The translations under genes were made by a program, and so were the position numbers. The notes beneath the pieces were generated by a model that was not told the DNA's origin, searched no databases, and saw only the letters and a list, made by a program, of their open reading frames with translations. From Octopus bimaculoides (lineage: Eukaryota), in NCBI RefSeq assembly GCF_001194135.2, contig NC_068985.1, forward strand, positions 74,418,279 to 74,455,199: a DNA stretch of 36,921 nt. Direction: 5' to 3'. Of the stretch, positions 1,372 through 36,539 are shown piece by piece. Each line of letters begins with the position of its first letter. Within the stretch, counting starts at the first letter, position 1.

Positions 1372-2214
1372 CAGCATGCGATGGGTAAATTGTCGCCATT
1401 TATACTTTTAATTTCGCGTATGGTTTTTGATTTTGTTAACTACACAATATAGTAGTGTCAGTTGGGTACCGTGCGTGAGAAAAACAACTCAATGACGCAA
1501 TTCACTCTGCCAGAAATTTGGAAACGACATGCTGTTCTGCTTGGCATTCGTGCCGGAATCTCCAATACGAACACTTCATAATGTTTGGGTGTCAATCTGA
1601 AGACAGTGCAATCAGAGGACATGTACCGAGAGTGATGAAGATCAAACATCCAGTTAACATCTTGGTGTTTGGAGTGATCACTAGTGATGGCGACGTTATG
1701 CCGCCATTCATTTTCCCCCACTGCTTTACACTCAACATGGAGGCCTATATCAAGTGCCTGGATGAAGTAGTGCTGCCTTGGGTCAAGAGGGTGGCTGCTG
1801 GAATACCATATATCAGGCAACTGGACTCTGCAACATGCCACACAGGCAGGAGAACCCAGTCATGACTGGCTGACAATTTCTGCGACCACATCACTCATAA
1901 CATCTGACCACCTTACTCCCCAGAGTGGAACCACCTTGATTGTTACGTGTGAAGTGCAGTTGAGCGAGAGACCAAACAATCTCCTTGTAGCACCAAAGAT
2001 GAACTGAAGCAAGGATTAAAGAAGGAGACCACCAAGAAGAGTTGGCAGAGATTCTGAGGTCGTCTAGAAGCTGTTGTGATTTTATTGAATAAATTTATTC
2101 CTTGGGGTTTTTTGATATTTTTATGTAATTTTGATGAGTATATCTGTTAAAATAATATCTCGGTGTTATTTTCAGTTTTGCATAATTTAGTTGTCAATAT
2201 ATCACCGCACCCTG
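1372..2214 (+). mobile_element. Internally deleted, degenerate Tc1/mariner DNA transposon, DD37D (maT-like) family
   Basis: Frame 1518-1990 reads VFGVITSDGDVMPPFIF...QLDSATCHTGRRTQS*LADNFCDHITHNI*PPYSPEWNHLDCYV*; 37 residues separate the second and third catalytic Asp. An N-terminal fragment starts at ATG 1492 (MTQFTLPEIWKRHAVLLG). Imperfect TIRs: CAGCATGCGATGGGTAAATTG at 1372 and reverse complement CAGGGTGCGGTGATATATTG ending at 2214. Confidence 0.8.
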
Positions 2215-3609
2215 TTTATAGTGTAAAAAAAAAAACTCTGTAAAATCTCTACATATTATATATTGAAGCAAAACTGATAGGTGTTAAAAGAAATGTTAGG
2301 ATACCACATACTAGGCCTAAATGAATATGAATACCTGGCTGGTAGTTTACAAATTCAAGGCTTGATATTAAAATTGTCCTGAGCAGTACACGTAGACGAG
2401 AGCATAGAGAGCATTACAATAATGCCTTCAGATTGCAGATGGTTGTTTTAGAATCTTGAGTATTCCAGCAAATTGAACTCAAGAAGTAAAGCAAGGAAAA
2501 TATACCGAATAAGGATTTCGAAAAACTTAAGTGAACATTGCATCTGTGTATGCTACAGAGGATCTTATAAGGATGACTATGAATCGTAAGCTTGACTCTT
2601 TCAGTGCACTAATGAGCATTATCATAATGAAAGACAAACCCGAGCTCACCAGAACGCAAATCTAGGAAGAAAGAAATCGAAAAAGCAATCGTTCGAAATT
2701 TCTGACGATTTTCCAATCGGGTGTTTTATACATTTATGATCACACCTCTTCTATACATCGAACGTCAGTAGCAGACACTTTTCGTTTATTAGAACTCTCT
2801 CTATATATATATAATAAGAAATTAACATTAGATATTGTCTCAAACGATTTGATTAAAAATTACGCGCTAACGTTGATTTATATGCAAGATGTAAGTGTCT
2901 ATCTCCTCAATATATCTCCGTCTCTTTTTGTGTATATATATTGGTGCTAAATTTGCGGATATTTTGTGTCTCTATTTTCATGAAGATCATGATATATTGC
3001 TAGACAGCAGATGGTATTGAAGAACTTTCCGTAGAGAAGAGTACCAGCGTTTCTAAGTCGATGGAAAAAATTGTTCCAACCAGATCTCGTCAAAGATTAA
3101 TGAAAATGAAATTCATTGCTATTATTTACTGTTATCTAGAACTGATGTATCTTAGCTCTCGAGCAATGCAGGAAGATGCTCGTTGCAATAGAAACGCCAA
3201 GAATGTAGCGAGGCGATGAGTAGGAGTCATGAGGCCGCTCTTTAAGATTCTAAATAGTTAAAAGGTGAAATACTTAAGTGAAGGACTTCTCAGAAGACCT
3301 TCTGTTATTCGGAGGTCTCTGAAATGTATTTTTAATATATATACGTCTGTGTGTGTGTGTGTGTTTAATTGTCTGGGCGTACATACATAACTATATGTAT
3401 GTATGCATATGTACATAGACACATTCATGCATATGTGTACGTGTGAAGGAACGTAGCCTAGTTGTAAGACGGGCGAAATGCCTCCAAGCACTTTGTGTGG
3501 TGTGCTTACTGTTCTGACAGCTCGCCGCGTTATATAGACTGTTAATTGGAAATTATTTTATGAATATAACATTCAATATTTAAAAATAATGCTATTCTTA
3601 GGGAACTAT

Positions 3610-7661: not shown

Positions 7662-7871
7662 NNNNNNNNNNNNNNNNNNNNNNNNNNNNNNNNNNNNNNN
7701 NNNNNNNNNNNNNNNNNNNNNNNNNNNNNNNNNNNNNNNNNNNNNNNNNNNNNNNNNNNNNNNNNNNNNNNNNNNNNNNNNNNNNNNNNNNNNNNNNNNN
7801 NNNNNNNNNNNNNNNNNNNNNNNNNNNNNNNNNNNNNNNNNNNNNNNNNNNNNNNNNNNNNNNNNNNNNNN

Positions 7872-8760: not shown

Positions 8761-8899
8761 TATTCCTCTCTGCTGTAAGTGTAAATCCTAAAATTTTCGG
8801 GGGTGCGGATAGTCGATTTCATCGACACCAGTGCTCAACCGGTACTTGTTTTATAGACGCCGAAGTAATAAAATGCAAAGTTCACCTTGGTGTAATTTG
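8761..8899 (-). mobile_element. OR2-like SINE, 3' half (split by the TIR element)
   Basis: Reverse complement CAAATTACACCAAGGTGAACTTTGC...ATAAAACAAGTACCGGTTGAGCACTGGTGTCGATGAAATCGACT matches intact copies at 33979-34150 and 12154-12397. Confidence 0.75.
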
Positions 8900-10060
8900 G
8901 GATCTTTACCCTTTGAACGGCACATCGAGAAATTATTTTTTTGTAACTAAACACATTCAAACTTCGGACACTTGTAGAATGTGTCATATAAAACATCTTT
9001 TACTCTTAGTGCTGTTGAGAAAAGTTCGTATTTTAAAAGTTATTTCGTGTTAAAGTTGTCGTATTTCGGTAATTTCAACCAATCAATGACGTCTATTGAG
9101 GTGAAAACAATCAGTGCTGTTGTTTGTCAACAACAACTTCTAGCGGTGTATATTTCGTTTGTCACTGTTATTTATGACATATTTCATCTCAGTTACGATT
9201 GTATTAATAAACGAGTGTATCTGAAGCATGTTTACTTCATGGCACCACCACAATCGTTCGTGCATTTCTACTGCTCTTAGTTTTTTTCCTGTTTTTCAGC
9301 TATTATTTTTGGAAAGACATTTCCCCCACTCCAATTTCTTCATGTTTCACATTTTTCCGTAACTTTAATCCTAAAATCCCAACCCTAACCGTAACCCTAA
9401 CCGTAACCCTAAAACCTTAACCCCAACCCTAACCCTAAAACCCTAACCCTAAAACCCTAACCCTTAAACCCTAACCCTAACCCTAAAACCCTAACCCTAA
9501 CCTTAACCCTAAAACCCTAACCTACAACCAAAACCCTAGCCTAGTCCTAAAACCCTAAAACCGCAACCCTAACTCTAAAACCCTATCCCTAACCCTAACA
9601 CCCTAACTCTGACCTTAAAACCCTAACTCTAACCCTAACTCTAACTCTAAAACCCGAACCCTAACCCTAAAACCCTAATCCTAACTCTAAAACCTTATTC
9701 CTAACCCTAAAACCCTAACCCTAAACCTAACTCTAAAACCCGAAACCTAACCCAAAATCCCTAAAGCTATAACCAGTACAAACGCACGAACGATGTCATA
9801 AATAACAGTGACGAACGAAATATACACCGCCGATAGTTGTTTTTGACAAACAACGGCAGTAATTTTATTCAGCCGGTTGGTTGAAATTACCGAAATACTA
9901 CAACTTTAACACGAAATGACTTTGGAAATATAAACTTTTCTCAACAGCACTAAGAGTAAAAGATGTTTTATATGACACATTCTACCAGTGTCCGAAGTTT
10001 GAAAGTGTTTAGTTACAAAAAATTAATTTCTCGATGTGCCGTTCAAAAGGAAAAAGATCC
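8900..10060. mobile_element. Non-autonomous long-TIR (foldback/MITE-like) DNA transposon with 8-bp TSD and internal telomeric-repeat array; Merlin- or MULE-like
   Basis: 8900-9180 is the reverse complement of ~9790-10060 (about 90% identical by eye over the outer 180 bp); ends GGATCT...AGATCC; GTAATTTG is duplicated at 8892-8899 and 10061-10068; no ORF of note. Confidence 0.9.
9366..9765 (+). repeat. Interstitial degenerate telomeric array (CCCTAA)n / (CCCTAAAA)n
   Basis: ~55-60 units of CCCTAA and variants (CCCTAAAA, CCGTAA, CTCTAA, CCTTAA); G-rich TTAGGG strand on minus. Confidence 0.95.
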
Positions 10061-10145
10061 GTAATTTGATCTGCGAACTTAAAGACAGACGCAATGCAGC
10101 CAAACAGTGTACCCGGCATGTTAACGATTCTGCTAGCTTGCCGCC
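10061..10145 (-). mobile_element. OR2-like SINE, 5' tRNA-derived head (split by the TIR element)
   Basis: Reverse complement GGCGGCAAGCTAGCAGAATCGTTAACATGCCGGG...GTCTTTAAGTTCGCAGATCAAATTAC; A-box TAGCAGAATCG. Confidence 0.78.
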
Positions 10146-10739
10146 TCGGAACAGACCAAAAAATATTCAAAGCACTATCACTGGTTTTAATTCTATTCTA
10201 TCCAAAAAAGCCTTTCGAGTACATTCTATACATGATTTAATTGTAAGATATTATATCATAATTTTGTTTAGAATAATCATTCGTTTCTATTTTGGCAGTA
10301 AAAATTATATGTGTGCGAGTAAAATGATTCCAGAAAAAAATAAAACTCTTAATATCTGGTCGGATATTCAACTTAATGAATTGGTTATGGCACAGGATTT
10401 TTTTATCTCTATAAAAAAGTCAAAGATTTGGATTTGCACACTATTCCGCCTAATAATCTACTGAGGTTAATTGTTTTATGAGATCTTTGTAAAAGCGACT
10501 CCGTACTTAAAGCTTATCTATGCTTGTTAATAATTGGATTTCAATTTCAATAATGCATAGTTAAAATTATTTACATAACACTGGACTGCATTGTTTTTAA
10601 CCAACGTATTTTTAATAATTGCTTCTATCCTTTAAGTCTTTCGGGATCTCAACAAAGACTGATGAGACCGGTACTGGTGCCATGTGAACGAGAACTAGCC
10701 GTTATATGGTTGAGTGGTCGGTGACAAACTGTCGCCCAG

Positions 10740-13803: not shown

Positions 13804-14939
13804 NNNNNNNNNNNNNNNNNNNNNNNNNNNNNNNNNNNNNNNNNNNNNNNNNNNNNNNNNNNNNNNNNNNNNNNNNNNNNNNNNNNNNNNNNNNNNNNNN
13901 NNNNNNNNNNNNNNNNNNNNNNNNNNNNNNNNNNNNNNNNNNNNNNNNNNNNNNNNNNNNNNNNNNNNNNNNNNNNNNNNNNNNNNNNNNNNNNNNNNNN
14001 NNNNNNNNNNNNNNNNNNNNNNNNNNNNNNNNNNNNNNNNNNNNNNNNNNNNNNNNNNNNNNNNNNNNNNNNNNNNNNNNNNNNNNNNNNNNNNNNNNNN
14101 NNNNATATTCTATCGTACATGTGAGCCCCATCAAGACTGCAACCACAGGTCCCTTGCCTTGACCTTCCGCTAAGGACCTTCCATCAGTGGCCGTGAGCCC
14201 GGTAAAAAGAGTTTGACCAAAGCTCACATCAAGGCACCCACATACACATACGCACACACCCATATAAGGCAGTCGCACACACACCCCTATAAGACGGACA
14301 TGCACACAACCTTATAAGGTGAACAGCCTACAAAATACACTGACCCCTCAATACATCCCCCTTCACACAAATTGTAACCCCAACTATACACAGACCCCCC
14401 CCACACACATTACACACCACACGTGAATATGACACCTCCCACACGAATTTATCCTTTACAGAAAGAAAACAGACCAATGAACACAGTTATGCACACCTAA
14501 ACGCCCGCAAAAAATTATATATATGGTACCACTACACATACGACACACACCATTCCTCTGGAGTACTACATTAATAATACCCATTTTCTCTATTTCAAGA
14601 TTACTCTTGCTGGCTTCACAGCAAAGCCAAACCGAGAGACATAACTCCTAAACTAATTACCTGGCCCCTTTCGTTCCACCAGCTTTTTCACAGTAGCTGC
14701 TGAACGGTTGTGTTAATTCATCTCAGACGATAGAAAACAGCCGTCATATTCCCTACCATACGCCATGAGCGTAAAGTTATATAATCGGTTTGATATCTAA
14801 TACTCCATCATATTCTTTACAAGAAATATCCAACCGCGATGGATATTTAATAATATACATTTCGGATAATATATGCAATCTACTGACATATATTCAGAGC
14901 ATTTTTCCCAGACTTATGATCTCGTAGACAATTCGCGTA

Positions 14940-16191: not shown

Positions 16192-16421
16192 ATATCCTTT
16201 CTACTATTGGCAAAAAGACTGGAATTTATTCTTCTTTTTATGGGGGTGGAGGTAGTCAATTACATTAACTCTAATGTTTGACTGGTACTTATTTCAACCA
16301 TCGCGAAAAATAAAATGAAAATCAAAGTCAACCTAGGTGGCATTGGAAATCAGAGCGTAAGGATGAGCGAAATTCCGCAAGTATTTTTGTCTGGTGAACC
16401 AACTATTTAGCCACCTCGCAG
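16192..16421 (-). mobile_element. OR2-like SINE, degenerate
   Basis: ATCCTTTCTACTATTGGC...ACTGGTACTTATTTC...AAAGTCAACCT...GCCACCTCGC is the reverse complement of the family pattern seen elsewhere in the window. Confidence 0.65.
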
Positions 16422-16744
16422 CATTTGTAAAAAAAAAAGACAAAAGACAAATAAACGGTTAGGTGCTCCGCGTAATGCTTGCGAAAATCGCGTAAAAAGA
16501 AACGTTGTTTCGTTTGATATGTGTCTATGTTTATTAAATAGCACATTATAAACATCTATCAAATAGTCAATTATAAGTAAAATTGTCCTTCAGTAATTTT
16601 ATTCCAGGATTTATTAAAGCAAATTTTAGAAGCTACTTGAATACTTGTTACGACACGAGTGAATTAAACGGTATTTGAATATATTTTAAAATGCAATAAC
16701 TTAGCAATTTCTTCCATTTGATGCTTTTTCCTTTTCATTACGAG

Positions 16745-17389: not shown

Positions 17390-18266
17390 TATGTTAGTAT
17401 ATATATAGAGAGATTTAACCTGAAGAGTCTAAAAGTGCTTCGTTACAAATGAGTCCTGGTTAAATATTGTGTGTCGGTGAAACGACGATCAAACGCTATT
17501 ATGAATGCTACTTATACTTTCTGTTGTTTACTTATATCTTTACATTATTGCTTACTTAATAATAATGATTGCAAATCTTGGCACAGGGACATACTTATAA
17601 CAATACTATATTATCTCATAAATAATGTATTGTATCTTATATTATTGCGTCTAATAACATTTATGTATGATAATAATATTTTGTTGTATAGAGAGGTAAG
17701 ATATTAAATAATCAATATACCTATGCTACTTTGCATTGCTGTCATTGTATCAATTAACTTTTATTTTATTTCACTTACCTGTTTATTCGTATTTCTGGTA
17801 CATAACTGTGTATATATGTTTTTTTTTCTTTTTTTATGTTAAATGTTTAATGTGTAATGCCTTTTCAGTTTTATTTCAATTATGATGTCGATTGTGCAGC
17901 GTGTGTGCGCTACGCTGTGTAACCTCTCTATAAACATGGGTAACTATATATATATATATATATATATNNNNNNNNNNNNNNNNNNNNNNNNNNNNNNNNN
18001 NNNNNNNNNNNNNNNNNNNNNNNNNNNNNNNNNNNNNNNNNNNNNNNNNNNNNNNNNNNNNNNNNNNNNNNNNNNNNNNNNNNNNNNNNNNNNNNNNNNN
18101 NNNNNNNNNNNNNNNNNNNNNNNNNNNNNNNNNNNNNNNNNNNNNNNNNNNNNNNNNNNNNNNNNNNNNNNNNNNNNNNNNNNNNNNNNNNNNNNNNNNN
18201 NNNNNNNNNNNNNNNNNNNNNNNNNNNNNNNNNNNNNNNNNNNNNNNNNNNATATATATATATATA

Positions 18267-21200
18267 GGATGGATCCCTTACCCCTATGAACAAGCAGGCT
18301 GATAAGGATAGGGAAGCTGAAGAAGCAACAACCAAAAGTCTCTCTGTGCCAACGGTCCTACAAAGGAATGGAGTCCTCAACCTATTGGAAACCAGAGGAA
18401 CGCAAGTGCTACCACCAGAAAAGGAAGGAAAGAACACGAGAACAACCATAAAGAATGAAGGGCAGAAAAGGAAAAGATGAAATACCAAATACCGAAATCC
18501 CAAACCACCAAACAAACAACAGAAAACTCAAATATGGAGATTCCAATGGAATCCGAAACCCTAGAGGAGAGAAGTAATTTGGAGTGAAGCCAGGGATATG
18601 CAAATGTTACCTGCAAGGCAAATGTTGGCATGGTTAAGTCGGAGCAAACTGCCTGTTTGTTTACCCGAGACACCGCCAAAACTACAGGGGCCTTAAGAAG
18701 AAAGGCTTCCCTGGGGAAGGGTACCAATTGTCTCCAAATAAAAAAGTATACAAATGCAGTGCTCTCTTCAGATGTCATGCCCAAGGCGGCAGCTTGCATG
18801 AGTATTGTGCATGACGCGAAAAGAATGTGCAGCAGCTGCCCTGACTACATCAAACGCAAACAAGGAACCTTACCCACCACTGTGCAAGACCACCACAATC
18901 AATAGACACAGGATGGCCTGCCCTAATGCCTGCACAGTCGTCACGCCAATATCTTTACTAAATACTGGGCGCCCTCTTGGATTACAACAACAAAAGCAAC
19001 ATTTCTTTTTCCTGAGATATCTTACTACATGCAATCAATCACTATGCATAGCACTTGTAGAAACTTATCTGAGCCCTGATATTGAGGATGCAGAAATACA
19101 CGTAACAAGAAAAATATATACCACACTGCAAACAGACAGAAGAGAAAGAAGCCATGGTGGAGTTGCGGTATACATACGTGAAAACCTTACACCCCAGGTG
19201 TTACTGTAATACTCAAATTCAGTTTGTGACACTCTAACTGTATACATAAGACAACAAAATATAATCATTTGCAATACATATCGCCCACTGGATGTTGCAA
19301 ACCACATAAGCAAGTTTGAATATTGCCTCACAAGAATTAAAGAAATACTCATGAAACTGGAACAACATGTGAGCGTATTTCTTTTGGGTGATTTCAACTT
19401 CCCCAATGTTAAATGGCCCGAAGACCTCATGCTCTCAGGAATGACTCATTGCAAACAAGCACAGGTGGAGTCCCAGCTCAAACTCAACTGTGCCCTATTC
19501 ATGAGGTTGTGCTCAACCAAATATGGCGAATTACATTTAGGTTCCCTGCCTTACAAACAATATGGACATCGTTTGTGATGTGAAATTGACGCCGTCATTA
19601 GTTTCGGATCACAACGTAAAAGAGCTGTCTATGTATGCACCAAAAGTAGCCAGAGTCATACGGCCTAAATCTCTCCAATCTGAACTTCCACAAAGCAAAC
19701 CGGAAATCGATTCAAAAAGAGATCCGCAGACAGGACTGGCCTAAATGTCTCCCCACACCAAACATTGGCATGAAACTGGAATATTTTTTCATGTTTGCTA
19801 TACAAACCATATGCCAGACATATGTCCCAGAGCATAAGTCCAACACAAAAAGGAACAAGGTTCCAAGGAGGGTAAGTTCCTCATGAGACGACGGAGGAAG
19901 ATTGCAATTCGCTTCAACCAACATTCCAACAGTGATGGAGATTGAATAAAAGCCTGCAACAATACTATATGAGGGAGAGAGTAGACAAAGAAGCTCTGTT
20001 TATAAAAGTCAAACCCAGTGGCCTTCTTTCATTATGCCAAAGAAACATCCTCAGTACGCTGCACAATAGGACCCCTCTTCCAAAAGATTGGCTTCCTCAC
20101 AGGTAACCCAAGCAGGATCAGTGAGGTGCTGAATAACCAGTTCAAAAGTGTCTTTACAAGCCTTTTGGAAGGCAGACAAAGGAACGAGCCAGTGAATTTC
20201 TTTGCCACCTCACCTATAACCATTGAGGCAGTTACGATGGATTACATCAACATTAGTGAAGAATAAATACTACTAGCCATCGATGAGGTGGACGCAAACG
20301 CAACTGCTGATCCTGATGGTTTCCCAGCGATCCGCCTCCAACTGCATAAGGAAAACCCCTATAGATTCTCTTCAAGGGTTTTCTTGTAAATGGCAGGCTG
20401 CCAAGGAATCTGAAGGAGAGAATAATATGCCCAAACTATAAAGGAGGAACCAGAGAAGATGAGAAAGACTATAGGCCTATCTCTCTGACTTTTCACGTCA
20501 GCAAGGTAATGGAATGGATAGGCAGAGGGAAACTAATCGCATTCCTTGAAGAAAACGACTTGCTGAGTTATACCCAGCATGGCTTTCGACCAGGTAGGAG
20601 CTGTCAGACCTAGCTCTTACAAAACTATGACTGGGTGTTGAGGCCGTAACTCAACAACTCAAATTTGGACGTAATATAACTTGACTTTGCAAAACCTTTT
20701 GATAAACTGGATCATGGTATGATATGTCACAAACTGCGTGATCTCGGCATAGCTGGAAAACTTGGAGAGTGGTTACATGACTTTCTAAAAGACAGAAGTC
20801 TAGCTTGTAGTGGCAAATGGAGCGACCTCAAAGAAAACAGAAATAGTGAGTTGTGTTCCACAGGGCACACTCTTGGGACTACTGCTTTTCATAGTGGCAC
20901 TCTTAGATATGCCCTCAGCTACCCGGATAGTCACCTATGCTAGCTACGGAGACGATAAGAAAGTCTCGCACAAAATACAGATCCCCCAGCGATGTTGCAC
21001 ACCTTCAGCAGGGATTGGACTCAATTTACAGATGGGCGGAGGACAATAATGTGCAATTTAATGCTGAAAAATTCCAAGCCCTGCACTACCAGCGTCGAAA
21101 ACTGAATATAAAACTTATAGGGGATTACAATCCCAGAACCTATATCAGTGTGAGACCTGGGTATCGACATGAGTTATGATGCCTCTTTCCAAGTGCACAT

Positions 21201-21895
21201 TACCAGAATCGCGACAAAGAGCAGACGACTGACTGGCTGGATGGATTCTAAGAACGTTCAGAAACAGAGAGCAGGAAACTATCATGATGGTCCTCGGGAG
21301 GACATTCGTCCTTAGCCGCCTGTATTATTTCTTCCATCTAAGGTCACGCAACAGTGTAAAATTAACAGCAGACCTTGAAGCAATCCAGCGAAGCTTCACA
21401 AATGAGATCGTCTCATTGCAACAGCCATTCATAGTGCTGTAAGATCTGGGTTAGGCAGCGCCTACCTGGTCGAAAGTCATGCTGGGTATCACTCAGCAAG
21501 TCGTTTTCTTCAAGGAATGCGATTAGTTTCCCTCTGACGATCTATTCCATGACTTCGCTGATGTGAGAAGTCGGGAATGGTATGCAGTAATATATATCTG
21601 GAAGATCCTGGAAGTTAATGCAACAGCTTGGGTTTCCGAAGCCCACAGCTTCTTCATATTCTCCCAAAGAGACACAGTGGATTTAGGTGGTTTCAAATCG
21701 AAACTGGAATTCTTCCTCTCGAGAGCCACAGATGAACCTCCCTCGCGGCATGAGATGCAAATGAGGTTAGCGACTTAAAAAAAAAAATTATTCATCAAAT
21801 GCCACATATTAGGAAGCTCTCAATAATAGCAGTGTAGCAAAACGGCGTTGCTCCAGCATGACCACATCTTTGAGCTGAAACTGAAAAAGTAAAAA
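18267..21895 (+). mobile_element. Long degenerate CR1-superfamily LINE (ORF1 remnant, APE endonuclease, reverse transcriptase, 3' tail)
   Basis: APE motifs VETYL (19060), GGVAVYIRE (19156), YRP, LGDFNFP (19387), SDHN (19604). RT motifs YRPISLT (20470), QHGFRPGRSC, LDFAKPFDKLDHG, VPQGTLLGLLLF (20858), YGDD (20945), WAEDNNVQFNAEKFQ, SVRDLGI. C-terminal YIWKILE and FKSKLEFFL. Many stops and frameshifts. Confidence 0.92.
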
Positions 21896-22006: not shown

Positions 22007-22039
22007 NNNNNNNNNNNNNNNNNNNNNNNNNNNNNNNNN

Positions 22040-24271: not shown

Positions 24272-24404
24272 TTTATCCATAAAAAAAAATTTCCAACCTT
24301 ACCATTGCTCTCTTTANNNNNNNNNNAGTCATTCTCTTTTAGTGCCTTATAATTTAACATGTTCACCGGTAAAATTTCCACTCATTTACTTATTTATTTT
24401 TCTA

Positions 24405-26620: not shown

Positions 26621-26974
26621 GTGAGTGTGGATCTCCAAGAAGAATGGTGTGACAAGAGCTAGAGGACACTTAATCCCAGTGGTTTTCGTGTGTGCCTTGA
26701 TGCCACGCAAAGCTATATCTGCACCCCTTCAATTAGATGGAATATCATGTGTATGATTTTAAATTGCATCCAGTAGTGAGGTTATGGTTCGGGAGTTCTA
26801 GGATTTTGAGGAAACAACTATTCGTAGTTATTATTCCCAGGTTGACTCTGACACGCAGTAGTAACACCTGTTAATGTCCCACCTATGGGATGACTACTAT
26901 ACCGGATATGCTTGCCTGCACCTTTACAAACAGACAGACACACACACAAACACACACACACACANNNNNNNNNN

Positions 26975-27724: not shown

Positions 27725-28820
27725 TATAGTGAGAATTTACAAAAAAGACGTAAACGGATGTGTAAACAACAAACAGATGTATTACTTCAACGCTCGGGGA
27801 GAAAGTCGTTTACGTTTCGAGCCTACGCTCTTCGACAGAAAGAACACAGAAATAAACAGAGAGAGAAAATAGAAAAGGTTTAGTGGATAGCGATCTATCA
27901 TGATATGTATATATATATAGATAGATAGATAGATATACAGATATATAAATTACACTCCAAGAGAGATGTACAAACAAACTCGCATACATACACACGTGTA
28001 TATATATGTATATAAATATATATATGTATGTATGTATTATTATAAAGTTATATATATATATATATATATATGNNNNNNNNNNNNNNNNNNNNNNNNNNNN
28101 NNNNNNNNNNNNNNNNNNNNNNNNNNNNNNNNNNNNNNNNNNNNNNNNNNNNNNNNNNNNNNNNNNNNNNNNNNNNNNNNNNNNNNNNNNNNNNNNNNNN
28201 NNNNNNNNNNNNNNNNNNNNNNNNNNNNNNNNNNNNNNNNNNNNNNNNNNNNNNNNNNNNNNNNNNNNNNNNNNNNNNNNNNNNNNNNNNNNNNNNNNNN
28301 NNNNNNNNNNNNNNNNNNNNNNNNNNNNNNNNNNNNNNNNNNNNNNNNNNNNNNNNNNNNNNNNNNNNNNNNNNNNNNNNNNNNNNNNNNNNNNNNNNNN
28401 NNNNNNNNNNNNNNNNNNNNNNNNNNNNNNNNNNNNNNNNNNNNNNNNNNNNNNNNNNNNNNNNNNNNNNNNNNNNNNNNNNNNNNNNNNNNNNNNNNNN
28501 NNNNNNNNNNNNNNNNNNNNNNNNNNNNNNNNNNNNNNNNNNNNNNNNNNNNNNNNNNNNNNNNNNNNNNNNNNNNNNNNNNNNNNNNNNNNNNNNNNNN
28601 NNNNNNNNNNNNNNNNNNNNNNNNNNNNNNNNNNNNNNNNNNNNNNNNNNNNNNNNNNNNNNNNNNNNNNNNNNNNNNNNNNNNNNNNNNNNNATATATA
28701 TACATGCATGTATTTGTTTATATATATATATATATATATATATATTCCCATGTATATGTAACCAGCATAATGTATTTAAACTACTTTTTAGATATGGAAC
28801 CACAGTCAAGTTTTATTAAT

Positions 28821-30298: not shown

Positions 30299-32098
30299 CA
30301 GATAGATAGTTTCTACGAAAAGATCTTAAGTGCTATCTTAAGCTTAAACTCGTACTTTTCTTTCTTAATACGGAAGTAATATTTTCATCAAAGTTCCTTA
30401 TAAACAGGGCAGTGTGTTTTGCCCTACACTTAAAAGAATAATCCCTTTTGCGTAACAGAAACGAAACACGAGTCGTATGAATTGCACATTGCTTACTAGA
30501 CCGACCCTTGAGAAATCAGTGCTTGTAGCGACACCTTCCCTAGCTAGAAAACAAGCTGCCACTTCATATTCTTCGCGATTAATTTCAACAGCACGCTGAG
30601 ATCCACTTCAACTATCACTCTAAACTAGATTCATTGTTCTATTTCCAGGGATACCAAGCCATCCAGCTGTAATTGCAAGTCGTTTAGAAATTCATGGAGA
30701 AACTCAACCTCGAAATATTCTTCCCCGCTCCCTCTCCATACAGAATTCTGTTCGGCCTGCAACCTTGCTTGCAAAAACCGTTTACATTTTTATTATTCTA
30801 AGAAAATGCATTACGTTTCATCTTATAGGTATAATTTCAAACATCGAACCCAGCGTATCAAACTATCAGTAGTTTTCTTGCACCAGAGGCATCCAAACCG
30901 ACACGTCCACCTGTGACCCATTTTGATCATTTCAGATATCTTAATTATCCTTGATTCGGGATCTCAGGCAGCTCAGCCACATTTTGGTCACTTATTCTCA
31001 CTTGAATATACAGCACACCTTCCAAAATCTGAGCTATAAAAGAGTTTGATACTGCAGGCCCCGTTTTGGATATAGGAAGTCTAATCATTTGTTCGCCTTT
31101 TGTAATAATACCAAGCAATCCTGAAATTTTGAGACTAATAAATTAATACGCCTAGTCAGTCGCTCTCCTTCCTATATCTGTTAGCATTTTCACTTCATTC
31201 TTTACAAATTCAAAATACGTTCTCTCTGGAAAATGGGCTGTAAATGGTTTTGTATACGCTTGAGTGTGTCGAAACGTCTAGGCAGAATAGAGGCAGCTGA
31301 CGAAGGATTAATTCCAGGTGGCTATCTGTTTCCTATGTGTTCGTTCTGTTGTCAGTAGTTTATTGTTCTAACGTTCTGTACCCTGATATGCATCTATATA
31401 CACATGTAGATGTAAGTATGTACATATATGTGTGTATACATGCATATATATTCTTTGTATTATATATATATATATATATATNNNNNNNNNNNNNNNNNNN
31501 NNNNNNNNNNNNNNNNNNNNNNNNNNNNNNNNNNNNNNNNNNNNNNNNNNNNNNNNNNNNNNNNNNNNNNNNNNNNNNNNNNNNNNNNNNNNNNNNNNNN
31601 NNNNNNNNNNNNNNNNNNNNNNNNNNNNNNNNNNNNNNNNNNNNNNNNNNNNNNNNNNNNNNNNNNNNNNNNNNNNNNNNNNNNNATATGCCCTAAATTC
31701 CCTTTATTATAAATGAATTCAGGCGTTGTCGGCACACCTCTCAGAAAATAAAAATATTGATAATCATCTGTGTGAATTCCAATGTTTCAACGTGCTTCAG
31801 AATGATTTTTCTATCATCTAAACTATCAAGTGTCTTAAATTGGCATCACTAAACAATATATGTCCACAAAAGAAATGTATGTTGAATTAACGTTCAATGT
31901 CTCTTTCCAGCACTTATAACGCATTGTTATAGTTATTCAGCATCTGTAATTACATATGGTTATTACGCATTGTAACTTTTGAACACTTACACTTTGAAAG
32001 TAAAATTTTTATGAATCCTGTCTGACAAGGCTATGAACAGAAACTGAACATGAAATTAATATGTATTTTCTGAAATTTTAGTTTTGTTATCACAGCTT

Positions 32099-34803: not shown

Positions 34804-36539
34804 AGGAAAACCAATACAACGCCTTAGATTTTCATGTGTCCTCAATAAAATGTTTGTCAAGTATGACAGTCGAAGAGTAATGGAATATCTCAGTGACATG
34901 CTTTACATTTTAATCACACGGTTCTGGAGTTAGAGGTATTTAGCTACAATACAAATGTGTAAAAGCTCTATATTCGTATATACATACATACATAAATATA
35001 TACATACCTAAGCACACGTACAAACACACACGCACACGTACACACACGCACGTAAAATCGTTGACTTTTAGTGGGGAACATAACACAAACTCTAAGACAC
35101 AAACACAAGCATACAGAAATATATAGACACATACGTATGTTTGTGCGTGTGTGTGTGATATGTATGCACACACACACACGCACACCCTTTCTCTCTCCCT
35201 CTCTCTCCCTATATATATATATATATATATATATNNNNNNNNNNNNNNNNNNNNNNNNNNNNNNNNNNNNNNNNNNNNNNNNNNNNNNNNNNNNNNNNNN
35301 NNNNNNNNNNNNNNNNNNNNNNNNNNNNNNNNNNNNNNNNNNNNNNNNNNNNNNNNNNNNNNNNNNNNNNNNNNNNNNNNNNNNNNNNNNNNNNNNNNNN
35401 NNNNNNNNNNNNNNNNNNNNNNNNNNNNNNNNNNNNNNNNNNNNNNNNNNNNNNNNNNNNNNNNNNNNNNNNNNNNNNNNNNNNNNNNNNNNNNNNNNNN
35501 NNNNNNNNNNNNNNNNNNNNNNNNNNNNNNNNNNNNNNNNNNNNNNNNNNNNNNNNNNNNNNNNNNNNNNNNNNNNNNNNNNNNNNNNNNNNNNNNNNNN
35601 NNNNNNNNNNNNNNNNNNATGTAAAATAAAAATAAAAAATTTAAATACACATTAAGTACAGGACATCACCAACGAGAGAAGAATACGTAGACACACAACG
35701 GGAGACAATCACGGGAGAAATTACAAAAAGAAGACTAACTCCTCCTCAGTTGTCGACTGTTTTTTACTACGTGTTTCGTGCTTTTAACGACAACAGGAAA
35801 ACTTCATAAGACAGCAGAATCCAGAAATTAAAAAAAAAAAAAACTTGCGAAGAGTTAGGGCTTCGAACAAACAGACGACGTGAGAGTGGATGGACGGAAA
35901 CGATTGCAGAAGATAGACGTTTAGGGCCGTTAGCCCAAGACGAATTTTAATGGGTAACACTTGGAAGAAATTTTGAAAGGATATAGAATAAATAGAAGAT
36001 ATCGTGAGACTATACTATTATGTTAATTAATAATGTGTTAAATGTGTAAATTAGCGTTCTCCTTGATGATTTGTTTCTTTACCTCAAGGACTCCAGTGAC
36101 GTTTATTAAATGTTCGTTATAGAGCTATATGCATGAAAAAGTATAGAACTATATTATCGACCTCAGATTTGAGAACGAAACACTCATAACTTTTTTTTCT
36201 TTTAAGACTTTATTGAATGAGATTGATTTCATGAAATTCCTCGAATTGAGCTCTATCATTTATACTTAATTGAAATATAGTTTGTTTGTTTCTTTTAAAC
36301 AGTTAGTTATACTTAAATCCAATTTTTGTCTCATATTTTTTCATGATATATTACCTCACAACTTTTTTTGATGCTTTTTTTATACTTTTATGTTGCATGG
36401 GAACAACACTATGAAACATGTTTTTTTCTATCATTGAAGCTAAGATAAATATATCTTGCTTTTAAAATAAAAACGTTATTTAGATCTAAACTTGATTGGT
36501 GGCGTTAATTACTCGCCTATAACGTGCTAAAATATAATA

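What the first reader, a model, noticed from the sequence alone, without database searches (positions are those of the whole stretch)
8892..10068. Foldback DNA transposon that carries a telomeric-repeat array as cargo
Seen: a 1161-bp element with ~280-bp TIRs ending GGATC/GATCC, an exact 8-bp TSD (GTAATTTG, 8892-8899 and 10061-10068), no coding capacity, and a ~400-bp (CCCTAA)n-type array inside. Established: TTAGGG is the usual molluscan telomere repeat; GG...CC termini with 8-9-bp TSDs and long TIRs fit the Merlin (IS1016-like) and MULE superfamilies. Inference: this interstitial telomeric sequence arrived by cut-and-paste mobilisation, not by chromosome fusion or telomerase healing. A MITE family could therefore be spreading telomere-protein binding sites and G-quadruplex seeds through the genome.
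Basis: partly seen in the sequence, partly recalled or inferred. Interest (0 to 1): 0.82.

Follow-up and report, generated by a model that had tools for sequence, protein, structure and literature searches.

The report
Hairpin transposon carrying telomere-like repeats
A 1.16-kb non-coding "jumping gene" with long inverted ends really did insert here, inside an older short repeat, and its middle holds a decayed telomere-like repeat tract; whether this is a family that spreads such tracts could not be tested.

Summary
Window 8900-10060 is a 1,161-bp element with GGATC…GATCC termini, long inverted arms, an exact 8-bp direct repeat (GTAATTTG) on each side, and no coding capacity.

New evidence: the element splits a copy of a roughly 190-bp dispersed SINE-like repeat. 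Five other copies of that repeat in the same window run straight through the insertion point and carry the 8-mer once. These are paralogous empty sites, so insertion with target-site duplication is shown directly.

The "telomeric array" (about 9357-9766) is only telomere-like. Of 63 units, 17 are exact CCCTAA and 18 are octamers of the CCCTAAAA type that recur every 2-4 units. The longest perfect run is three hexamers.

GG termini, an 8-bp duplication and arm length fit the Merlin superfamily, which is reported as unusually abundant in Octopus bimaculoides. No transposase link could be tested.

Copy number, family-wide presence of the array and the "spreading telomere-protein sites" idea therefore remain untested.

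Tandem-repeat-bearing MITEs are known in molluscs, and carriage of telomeric repeats by transposable elements is an old proposal. Verdict: a real, ordinary-mechanism transposon insertion with unusual cargo, of moderate interest.

The parts
8792..8899 (+). 5' part of the host SINE-like dispersed repeat that the element split
   Evidence: The joined flanks align colinearly across the junction to five other copies in the window.
8892..8899 (.). Left copy of the 8-bp target-site duplication, GTAATTTG
   Evidence: Identical to 10061-10068. Paralogous copies of the host repeat carry this 8-mer once.
8900..9284 (+). Left inverted arm, starting GGATC. 9179-9252 is a 74-bp segment absent from the right arm.
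   Evidence: (I1, I2, I3). No tandem sub-repeats inside the arm.
9285..9356 (+). Unique spacer between the left arm and the array. Its 3' end grades into degenerate repeat units.
   Evidence: No partner in the right arm; unit parse.
9357..9766 (-). Telomere-like minisatellite, G-rich (TTAGGG-type) strand on minus. A purer zone spans 9383-9520 and a degenerate zone spans 9521-9766 next to the right arm.
   Evidence: Tandem Repeats Finder. Unit parse: 33 hexamers, 18 octamers, 12 units of other lengths. Substitutions 4.3% versus 15.3% in the two zones. Five non-overlapping G-quadruplex motifs.
9763..10060 (-). Right inverted arm, ending GATCC
   Evidence: Single-stranded DNA folds into one long hairpin with the array in the loop, minimum free energy -261 kcal/mol.
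10061..10068 (.). Right copy of the target-site duplication, GTAATTTG
10069..10149 (+). 3' part of the split host SINE-like repeat

Best explanation
Window 8900-10060 is a non-autonomous DNA transposon with terminal inverted repeats. It has a foldback shape: two arms of 385 and 298 bp make up 59% of its length. It inserted into a pre-existing copy of a SINE-like repeat.

Shown: a precisely bounded inverted-repeat element, an 8-bp duplication of the target, and uninterrupted paralogous target sites.

Inferred mechanism: a transposase supplied in trans by an autonomous relative bound the GG-ending arms and cut the element out of a donor site. It then joined the element to a target cut with an 8-bp stagger, and gap repair produced the GTAATTTG duplication. 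The most likely source is a Merlin (IS1016-like DDE) element. A MULE or an unclassified superfamily is possible.

The hairpin loop holds a roughly 410-bp telomere-like minisatellite that the element carries passively. At least its degenerate right half was probably already present when the element landed, because it is about three times more substituted than the arms' divergence allows. The purer left part may have grown later by slippage.

The element has since decayed: 8.7% mismatch between the arms and indels of 15 and 74 bp. It is probably immobile now.
For: - Inverted arms: E = 9e-94; 91% identity over 298 aligned columns.
- Exact 8-bp duplication with unique boundaries, chance about 3e-5.
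- Joined flanks align across the junction to five other copies of the host repeat, nhmmer E = 1e-19 to 3e-4, each with a single 8-mer.
- No ORF with any homologue.
- Hairpin fold with the array in the loop.
- Merlin is defined by terminal 5'-GG, 8-9-bp duplications and inverted repeats of 24-462 bp (PMC8101967). Merlin is unusually abundant in O. bimaculoides, with 191 sequences. Merlin, Mutator, hAT and many unclassified inverted-repeat families are annotated in O. vulgaris (PMC13282606).
- Cargo inference: substitutions in the 9521-9772 zone are 15.3%, against 4.6% per lineage estimated from the arms. For the array as a whole, a binomial test against the per-lineage rate gives p = 3e-7.
Against: - Only one copy was seen. 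No other copy, no autonomous partner and no orthologous empty site could be examined.
- GG termini and an 8-bp duplication do not identify a superfamily on their own.
- The age argument for cargo assumes the arms were identical at insertion and have not been homogenised since. It also assumes array variants arose independently, yet CTCTAA and CCGTAA variants are clustered, so some were copied by slippage.
- At 1,161 bp the element is larger than a typical MITE.
Confidence: 0.7

Rival explanations
1. The transposon insertion is the same, but the telomere-like tract is not cargo. It arose inside this copy after insertion. One route is birth and slippage expansion of a CCCTAA-like microsatellite in the loop. 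The other is a break at the fragile centre of the long palindrome, extended by telomerase from the right arm's inner end and then rejoined.
For: - The G-strand runs 5'->3' away from the right arm's inner end, with degenerate repeats proximal and purer repeats distal. This is the polarity of a telomere seeded on that end.
- The array directly abuts the right arm, whereas 72 bp of unique spacer separate it from the left arm.
- The purer zone is 4.3% substituted, matching the post-insertion divergence estimated from the arms.
- The 14/20-bp compound periodicity and clustered variants show growth by slippage.
- Reviews list telomerase-mediated break repair and microsatellite birth as origins of interstitial telomeric sequences.
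Against: - The right-hand zone is 15% substituted with many length variants. That is more than post-insertion decay predicts from a perfect start.
- Telomerase products would be uniform hexamers, not a regular mix of hexamers and octamers.
Confidence: 0.25
2. The element is a retroelement product, for example two inverted terminal fragments of a Penelope-like element. Those elements can have inverted terminal repeats and telomeric-repeat tails, and they are very abundant in octopus.
For: - Penelope-like elements account for about 1.8 million annotated insertions in O. vulgaris.
- From general knowledge, some clades carry short telomeric repeats and inverted terminal repeats.
Against: - The arms end precisely at GG…CC with a fixed 8-bp duplication.
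- The array has one orientation, not tail-to-tail.
- No reverse transcriptase or GIY-YIG remnant or homologue appears in any frame.
Confidence: 0.03
3. The structure is not mobile DNA. It is a local inverted duplication around an interstitial telomeric tract, or a short-read assembly artefact, with a chance direct repeat at its edges.
For: The window is a gapped draft assembly with nine N runs.
Against: - Five paralogous host-repeat copies show that exactly the arms plus the loop are the extra DNA, bounded by the duplicated 8-mer.
- The arms differ by 8.7% plus indels, unlike an assembly-made palindrome.
- There is no N run inside the element.
Confidence: 0.02

Closest known systems
Merlin superfamily non-autonomous elements (eukaryotic relatives of IS1016/IS1595)
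   Same: Terminal 5'-GG, an 8-bp target-site duplication, and arm length within the reported 24-462 bp. The superfamily is abundant in Octopus bimaculoides.
   Different: No DDE_Tnp_IS1595 transposase is present, and no demonstrated similarity to the ends of an autonomous Merlin. The shared features are low-specificity.
Tandem-repeat-containing MITE-like elements of molluscs and insects (pearl/CvA, DTC84, DINE-1/mini-me; now largely regarded as Helentron derivatives)
   Same: Non-coding mobile elements whose centre is a short tandem array plus microsatellite between flanks bearing inverted repeats. They disperse satellite-like repeats (PMC3879986; PMC7492417).
   Different: Those elements have roughly 160-bp core repeats, a tetranucleotide microsatellite, 10-20-bp inverted repeats and an AA "duplication". 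This one has 300-385-bp arms, an 8-bp duplication and a 6/8-bp telomere-like unit.
Foldback elements (Drosophila FB and similar)
   Same: Long inverted arms make up most of the element, and it folds into a hairpin.
   Different: FB arms are built of tandem sub-repeats and make 9-bp duplications (general knowledge). Here the arms have no sub-repeats and the duplication is 8 bp.
Transposon-associated internal telomeric repeats in ciliates (Tetrahymena Tel-1, Oxytricha TBE1), and the general proposal that mobile elements carry interstitial telomeric sequences
   Same: Telomere-type repeats sit at internal chromosomal sites because they are part of a transposon. Reviews list this as a proposed origin of interstitial telomeric sequences. 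The ciliate cases are from general knowledge.
   Different: In the ciliate elements the telomeric repeats are short blocks at the element termini. Here they form a long degenerate array in the loop, in a metazoan.
Short interstitial telomeric sequences inserted by telomerase during double-strand-break repair (primates, rodents, horse)
   Same: An internal TTAGGG-type tract in a single orientation (PMC7215372 listed).
   Different: Those tracts are near-perfect hexamers inserted alone. Here the inserted unit is the whole inverted-repeat element with a target duplication.

Membership tests
Merlin superfamily | Termini begin 5'-GG | tested here: met
   GGATC at 8900 and GATCC at 10060. Criterion from PMC8101967.
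Merlin superfamily | 8- or 9-bp target-site duplication | tested here: met
   Exact 8-bp GTAATTTG, confirmed against paralogous empty sites.
Merlin superfamily | Terminal inverted repeats of 24-462 bp | tested here: met
   Arms of 385 and 298 bp.
Merlin superfamily | DDE_Tnp_IS1595 transposase, or ends matching an autonomous element that encodes one | not testable with these tools
   This copy encodes nothing recognisable.
MITE (generic) | Terminal inverted repeats, a target-site duplication, and no coding capacity | tested here: met
MITE (generic) | Small size (usually up to about 600-800 bp) | tested here: not met
   The element is 1,161 bp. Size criterion as in PMC3879986.
MITE (generic) | High copy number of homogeneous copies | not testable with these tools
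   One copy in the window. No external collection holds the source genome.
Foldback (Drosophila FB type) | Long arms that form a hairpin | tested here: met
   the arms make up 59% of the length.
Foldback (Drosophila FB type) | Arms composed of tandem sub-repeats | tested here: not met
   No direct repeat families within 8900-9362.
hAT superfamily | 8-bp duplication together with YARNG termini | tested here: not met
   The duplication length fits, but the termini are GGATC. The terminus criterion is from general knowledge.
Tandem-repeat MITEs of the pearl/DTC84 type | Roughly 160-bp core repeats plus a tetranucleotide microsatellite, short inverted repeats, AA duplication | tested here: not met
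   6/8-bp units, 300-bp arms and an 8-bp duplication against the criteria.
Fusion-type interstitial telomeric sequence | Head-to-head (TTAGGG)n(CCCTAA)n | tested here: not met
   29 CCCTAA and no TTAGGG hexamers inside the array on the + strand.
Canonical telomeric array | Long runs of perfect host telomere hexamers | tested here: not met
   17 of 63 units are exact and the longest run is three hexamers. TTAGGG is the only experimentally determined cephalopod motif. Host identity was not verified.

The most novel reading that the evidence does not exclude
The arms belong to a multi-copy Merlin-type non-autonomous family in octopods whose members regularly carry this telomere-like minisatellite. 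A cut-and-paste transposon would then be a major source of interstitial telomere-like tracts, and of G-quadruplex-prone, possibly shelterin-binding sites, in a cephalopod genome.
Probability: 0.2. Interest if true: 0.6.

Novelty: new member of a known kind. Interest (0 to 1): 0.4.

Why it matters
Interstitial telomeric sequences are usually read as scars of chromosome fusion or of telomerase-mediated break repair. Carriage by transposons is often proposed but rarely shown at sequence level. This locus is a clean single example: the telomere-like tract is demonstrably part of an inserted inverted-repeat element, nested in a SINE-like repeat with paralogous empty sites.

If it proved to be a family trait in cephalopods, it would bear on how such tracts should be interpreted in karyotype evolution. 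It would also add a class of dispersed G-rich sites. As a single decayed copy it is mainly a useful annotation and a lead.

Tried and rejected
1. Exact scans for arm 18-26-mers.
- Genome contigs gave 0 hits twice.
- Metagenome contigs gave 0 hits for a 26-mer.
- An 18-mer gave more than 120 metagenome hits and 1 viral hit. All were chance. One class is a GC-rich conserved bacterial gene. Another is an unrelated repeat family in a few JGI metagenomes in which the 18-mer lies internally. None shows further similarity to the arm.

2. Using ORFs as handles for other copies.
- Exact look-up of two ORFs overlapping the element found nothing.
- A six-frame translation of 8900-9362 against 5.8 billion proteins found nothing.

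3. Sampling the source genome through the window's LINE.
- The best relatives are only 64-71% identical at protein level and sit on 2-3-kb Logan/ENA contigs.
- The genome is therefore not in the collection in usable form, and the organism could not be confirmed.

4. Other searches.
- Rfam and ARAGORN found nothing relevant.
- Pfam on eight window ORFs gave no hits.
- The held literature contains no report of an octopus MITE or foldback element with telomeric repeats.

5. Explanations considered and rejected: chromosome-fusion interstitial telomeric sequence, Penelope-like inverted dimer, assembly artefact (see the rival explanations).

Full report
**1. What is there**

- The element starts GGATC at 8900 and ends GATCC at 10060.
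- GTAATTTG lies immediately outside both ends (8892-8899 and 10061-10068).
- The match is exact, and moving either boundary by one base breaks it. At this base composition an 8/8 match has probability about 3e-5.
- The left arm 8900-9180 pairs with 10060-9793 at BLAST E = 9e-94. The outer 178 nt are 94% complementary.

A global alignment adds detail.
- The arms continue inward past a 74-bp segment present only on the left (9179-9252). Positions 9253-9284 pair with 9794-9763.
- The arms are therefore 385 and 298 bp, with 272 matches and 26 mismatches (91.3%) and a further 15-bp indel.
- As single-stranded DNA the element folds into one long hairpin of -261 kcal/mol, with the repeat tract in the loop.
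- The arms contain no tandem sub-repeats.
- The longest ORF is 99 aa.
- A concatenated six-frame translation of 8900-9362 has no homologue among 5.8 billion proteins.

**2. The array**

Tandem Repeats Finder finds an AACCCT-type array at about 9360-9764. Period 6 gives only 69% matches and 16% indels, and periods 20 and 112 score higher.

Parsing the array into units gives 63 units.
- 33 are hexamers, 18 are octamers of the xxxTAAAA type, and 12 have other lengths.
- Only 17 are exact CCCTAA and 8 are exact CCCTAAAA.
- Octamers recur every 2-4 units, which produces the 14/20-bp periodicity.
- Variants are clustered: CCGTAA on the left and CTCTAA on the right.
- The longest perfect (CCCTAA) run is three units. 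There are five non-overlapping G-quadruplex motifs on the minus strand.

The tract is therefore a telomere-like compound minisatellite that evolved by local duplication. It is not a fresh telomerase product.

It has two zones.
- Zone 9383-9520 is 4.3% substituted, with 15 of 21 units exact.
- Zone 9521-9772 is 15.3% substituted, with 10 of 38 units exact.
- The degenerate zone abuts the right arm.
- The G-strand runs away from that arm, which is the polarity of a telomere seeded on the arm's inner end.

**3. Proof of insertion**

Joining the two flanks, with one copy of the 8-mer, gives a sequence that aligns colinearly across the junction to other places in the same window.
- 34139-33951 (-), nhmmer E = 1e-19
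- 12335-12154 (-), E = 6e-17
- 16228-16427 (+), E = 4e-11
- 12079-11947 (-) and 12519-12406 (-), weaker

In the multiple alignment each copy reads …ACCTCGGT-G[C/A]AATTTGAACT… with a single 8-mer and no gap.

The element therefore landed inside a copy of a roughly 190-bp dispersed SINE-like repeat (8792-8899 plus 10069-10149). The other copies act as paralogous empty sites. This rules out a chance direct repeat, a local inverted duplication and a fusion scar, and it shows that the arms and loop arrived as one unit. The arms differ by 8.7% while the host-repeat copies differ by about 30%, so the insertion is younger than the host repeat.

**4. Mechanism**

Shown: a sharply bounded inverted-repeat element, a fixed-length target duplication, and no coding capacity.

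Inferred: cut-and-paste mobilisation by a transposase supplied in trans.

Superfamily:
- Merlin is defined by terminal 5'-GG, 8-9-bp duplications and inverted repeats of 24-462 bp (PMC8101967). All three are met.
- The same survey found Merlin unusually abundant in Octopus bimaculoides, with 191 sequences.
- A 2026 O. vulgaris annotation lists Merlin, Mutator, hAT and 871 unclassified inverted-repeat families (PMC13282606).
- These features are weak discriminators. hAT is disfavoured by the termini. A MULE or an unclassified family remains possible.

**5. Cargo or later arrival?**

If the arms were identical at insertion, each has since accumulated about 4.6% change.
- The array as a whole is 11.4% substituted (binomial p = 3e-7 against 4.6%), and its right zone 15.3%.
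- This suggests that at least that part predates the insertion and was carried in.
- The purer left zone, at 4.3%, could have expanded around or after insertion.

Caveats:
- Exchange between the arms would make the element look younger than it is.
- Copied variants inflate the substitution count.

The rival is in-situ microsatellite growth, or telomerase extension at a break in the palindrome centre. It fits the polarity and the gradient, and I give it about 0.25.

**6. What could not be done**

No collection available here holds the source genome.
- Arm k-mers gave no true hits in the genome, metagenome or viral collections.
- ORF look-ups failed.
- The window's decayed LINE (18805-21614) finds only relatives 64-71% identical at protein level, on short Logan/ENA contigs.

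Copy number, presence of the array in other copies, an autonomous partner, orthologous empty sites and the identity of the host all remain untested.

**7. Comparison with what is known**

- TTAGGG is the only experimentally determined cephalopod telomere motif (Amphioctopus; cited in PMC13218726).
- Non-coding mobile elements with central tandem arrays are well known in molluscs and insects: pearl, DTC84, DINE-1 (PMC3879986; PMC7492417). They have a different architecture.
- Reviews repeatedly list transposition as a possible origin of interstitial telomeric sequences (PMC6410037; PMC9693754).
- Searches of the held literature found no described octopus or mollusc inverted-repeat element with an internal telomere-like array.

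I therefore file this as a new member of a known kind, a non-autonomous inverted-repeat transposon with an internal tandem array. The cargo is unusual and the nested-insertion proof is neat. Interest is moderate, and would be higher if the family-level reading holds.

Noticed in passing
window 8792-8899+10069-10149; 34139-33951(-); 16228-16427(+); 12519-12406(-), 12335-12154(-), 12079-11947(-); weak 3463-3531(+): A roughly 190-bp SINE-like dispersed repeat occurs at least six times in 37 kb, about 70% identical between copies. Three copies lie head-to-tail within 600 bp at 11.9-12.5 kb. ARAGORN and Rfam detect no tRNA-like head.
   Followed up: partly
window 18805-21614 (+): A decayed non-LTR retrotransposon with endonuclease and reverse-transcriptase motifs spread over three frames and many stops. 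It is 69% identical in DNA to an intact 1,033-aa ORF on Logan contig SRR20902413_414309 (Pfam RVT_1 and Exo_endo_phos_2).
   Followed up: partly
window 21416-21571 vs 20487-20640: A 154-156-bp piece of the LINE's RT region is present again in inverted orientation. It interrupts the LINE's 3' part: the intact relative aligns to 18805-21423 and resumes at 21569. This is an internal inverted duplication.
   Followed up: partly
window N runs 7662-7871, 13804-14104, 17968-18251, 22007-22039, 24317-24326, 26965-26974, 28073-28693, 31482-31685, 35235-35618: All nine assembly gaps abut microsatellites (TA, TATG, ACAC and similar), typical of a short-read draft. None lies inside the element.
   Followed up: no
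window 1518-1865 (+): A 115-aa ORF looks by eye like the C-terminal part of a mariner-type transposase. Pfam gave no hit at E <= 0.01, so this is unconfirmed.
   Followed up: partly
loci L005, L008, L010, L014, L020 and others (33 contigs) from JGI metagenomes Ga0056123/Ga0056131/Ga0056132/Ga0209788/Ga0209681: An abundant interspersed repeat family, presumably from a eukaryotic host in those samples, shares a 20-nt string (TGAACGGCACATCGAGAAAT) with the arm. It has no other similarity and the string lies inside the family, so I judge it a chance match.
   Followed up: yes
window 9383-9772: The array has a purity gradient: 4.3% substitutions on the left versus 15.3% on the right. Its polarity mimics a telomere seeded on the inner end of the right arm. 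Whether this reflects history or only uneven slippage is unexplained.
   Followed up: partly
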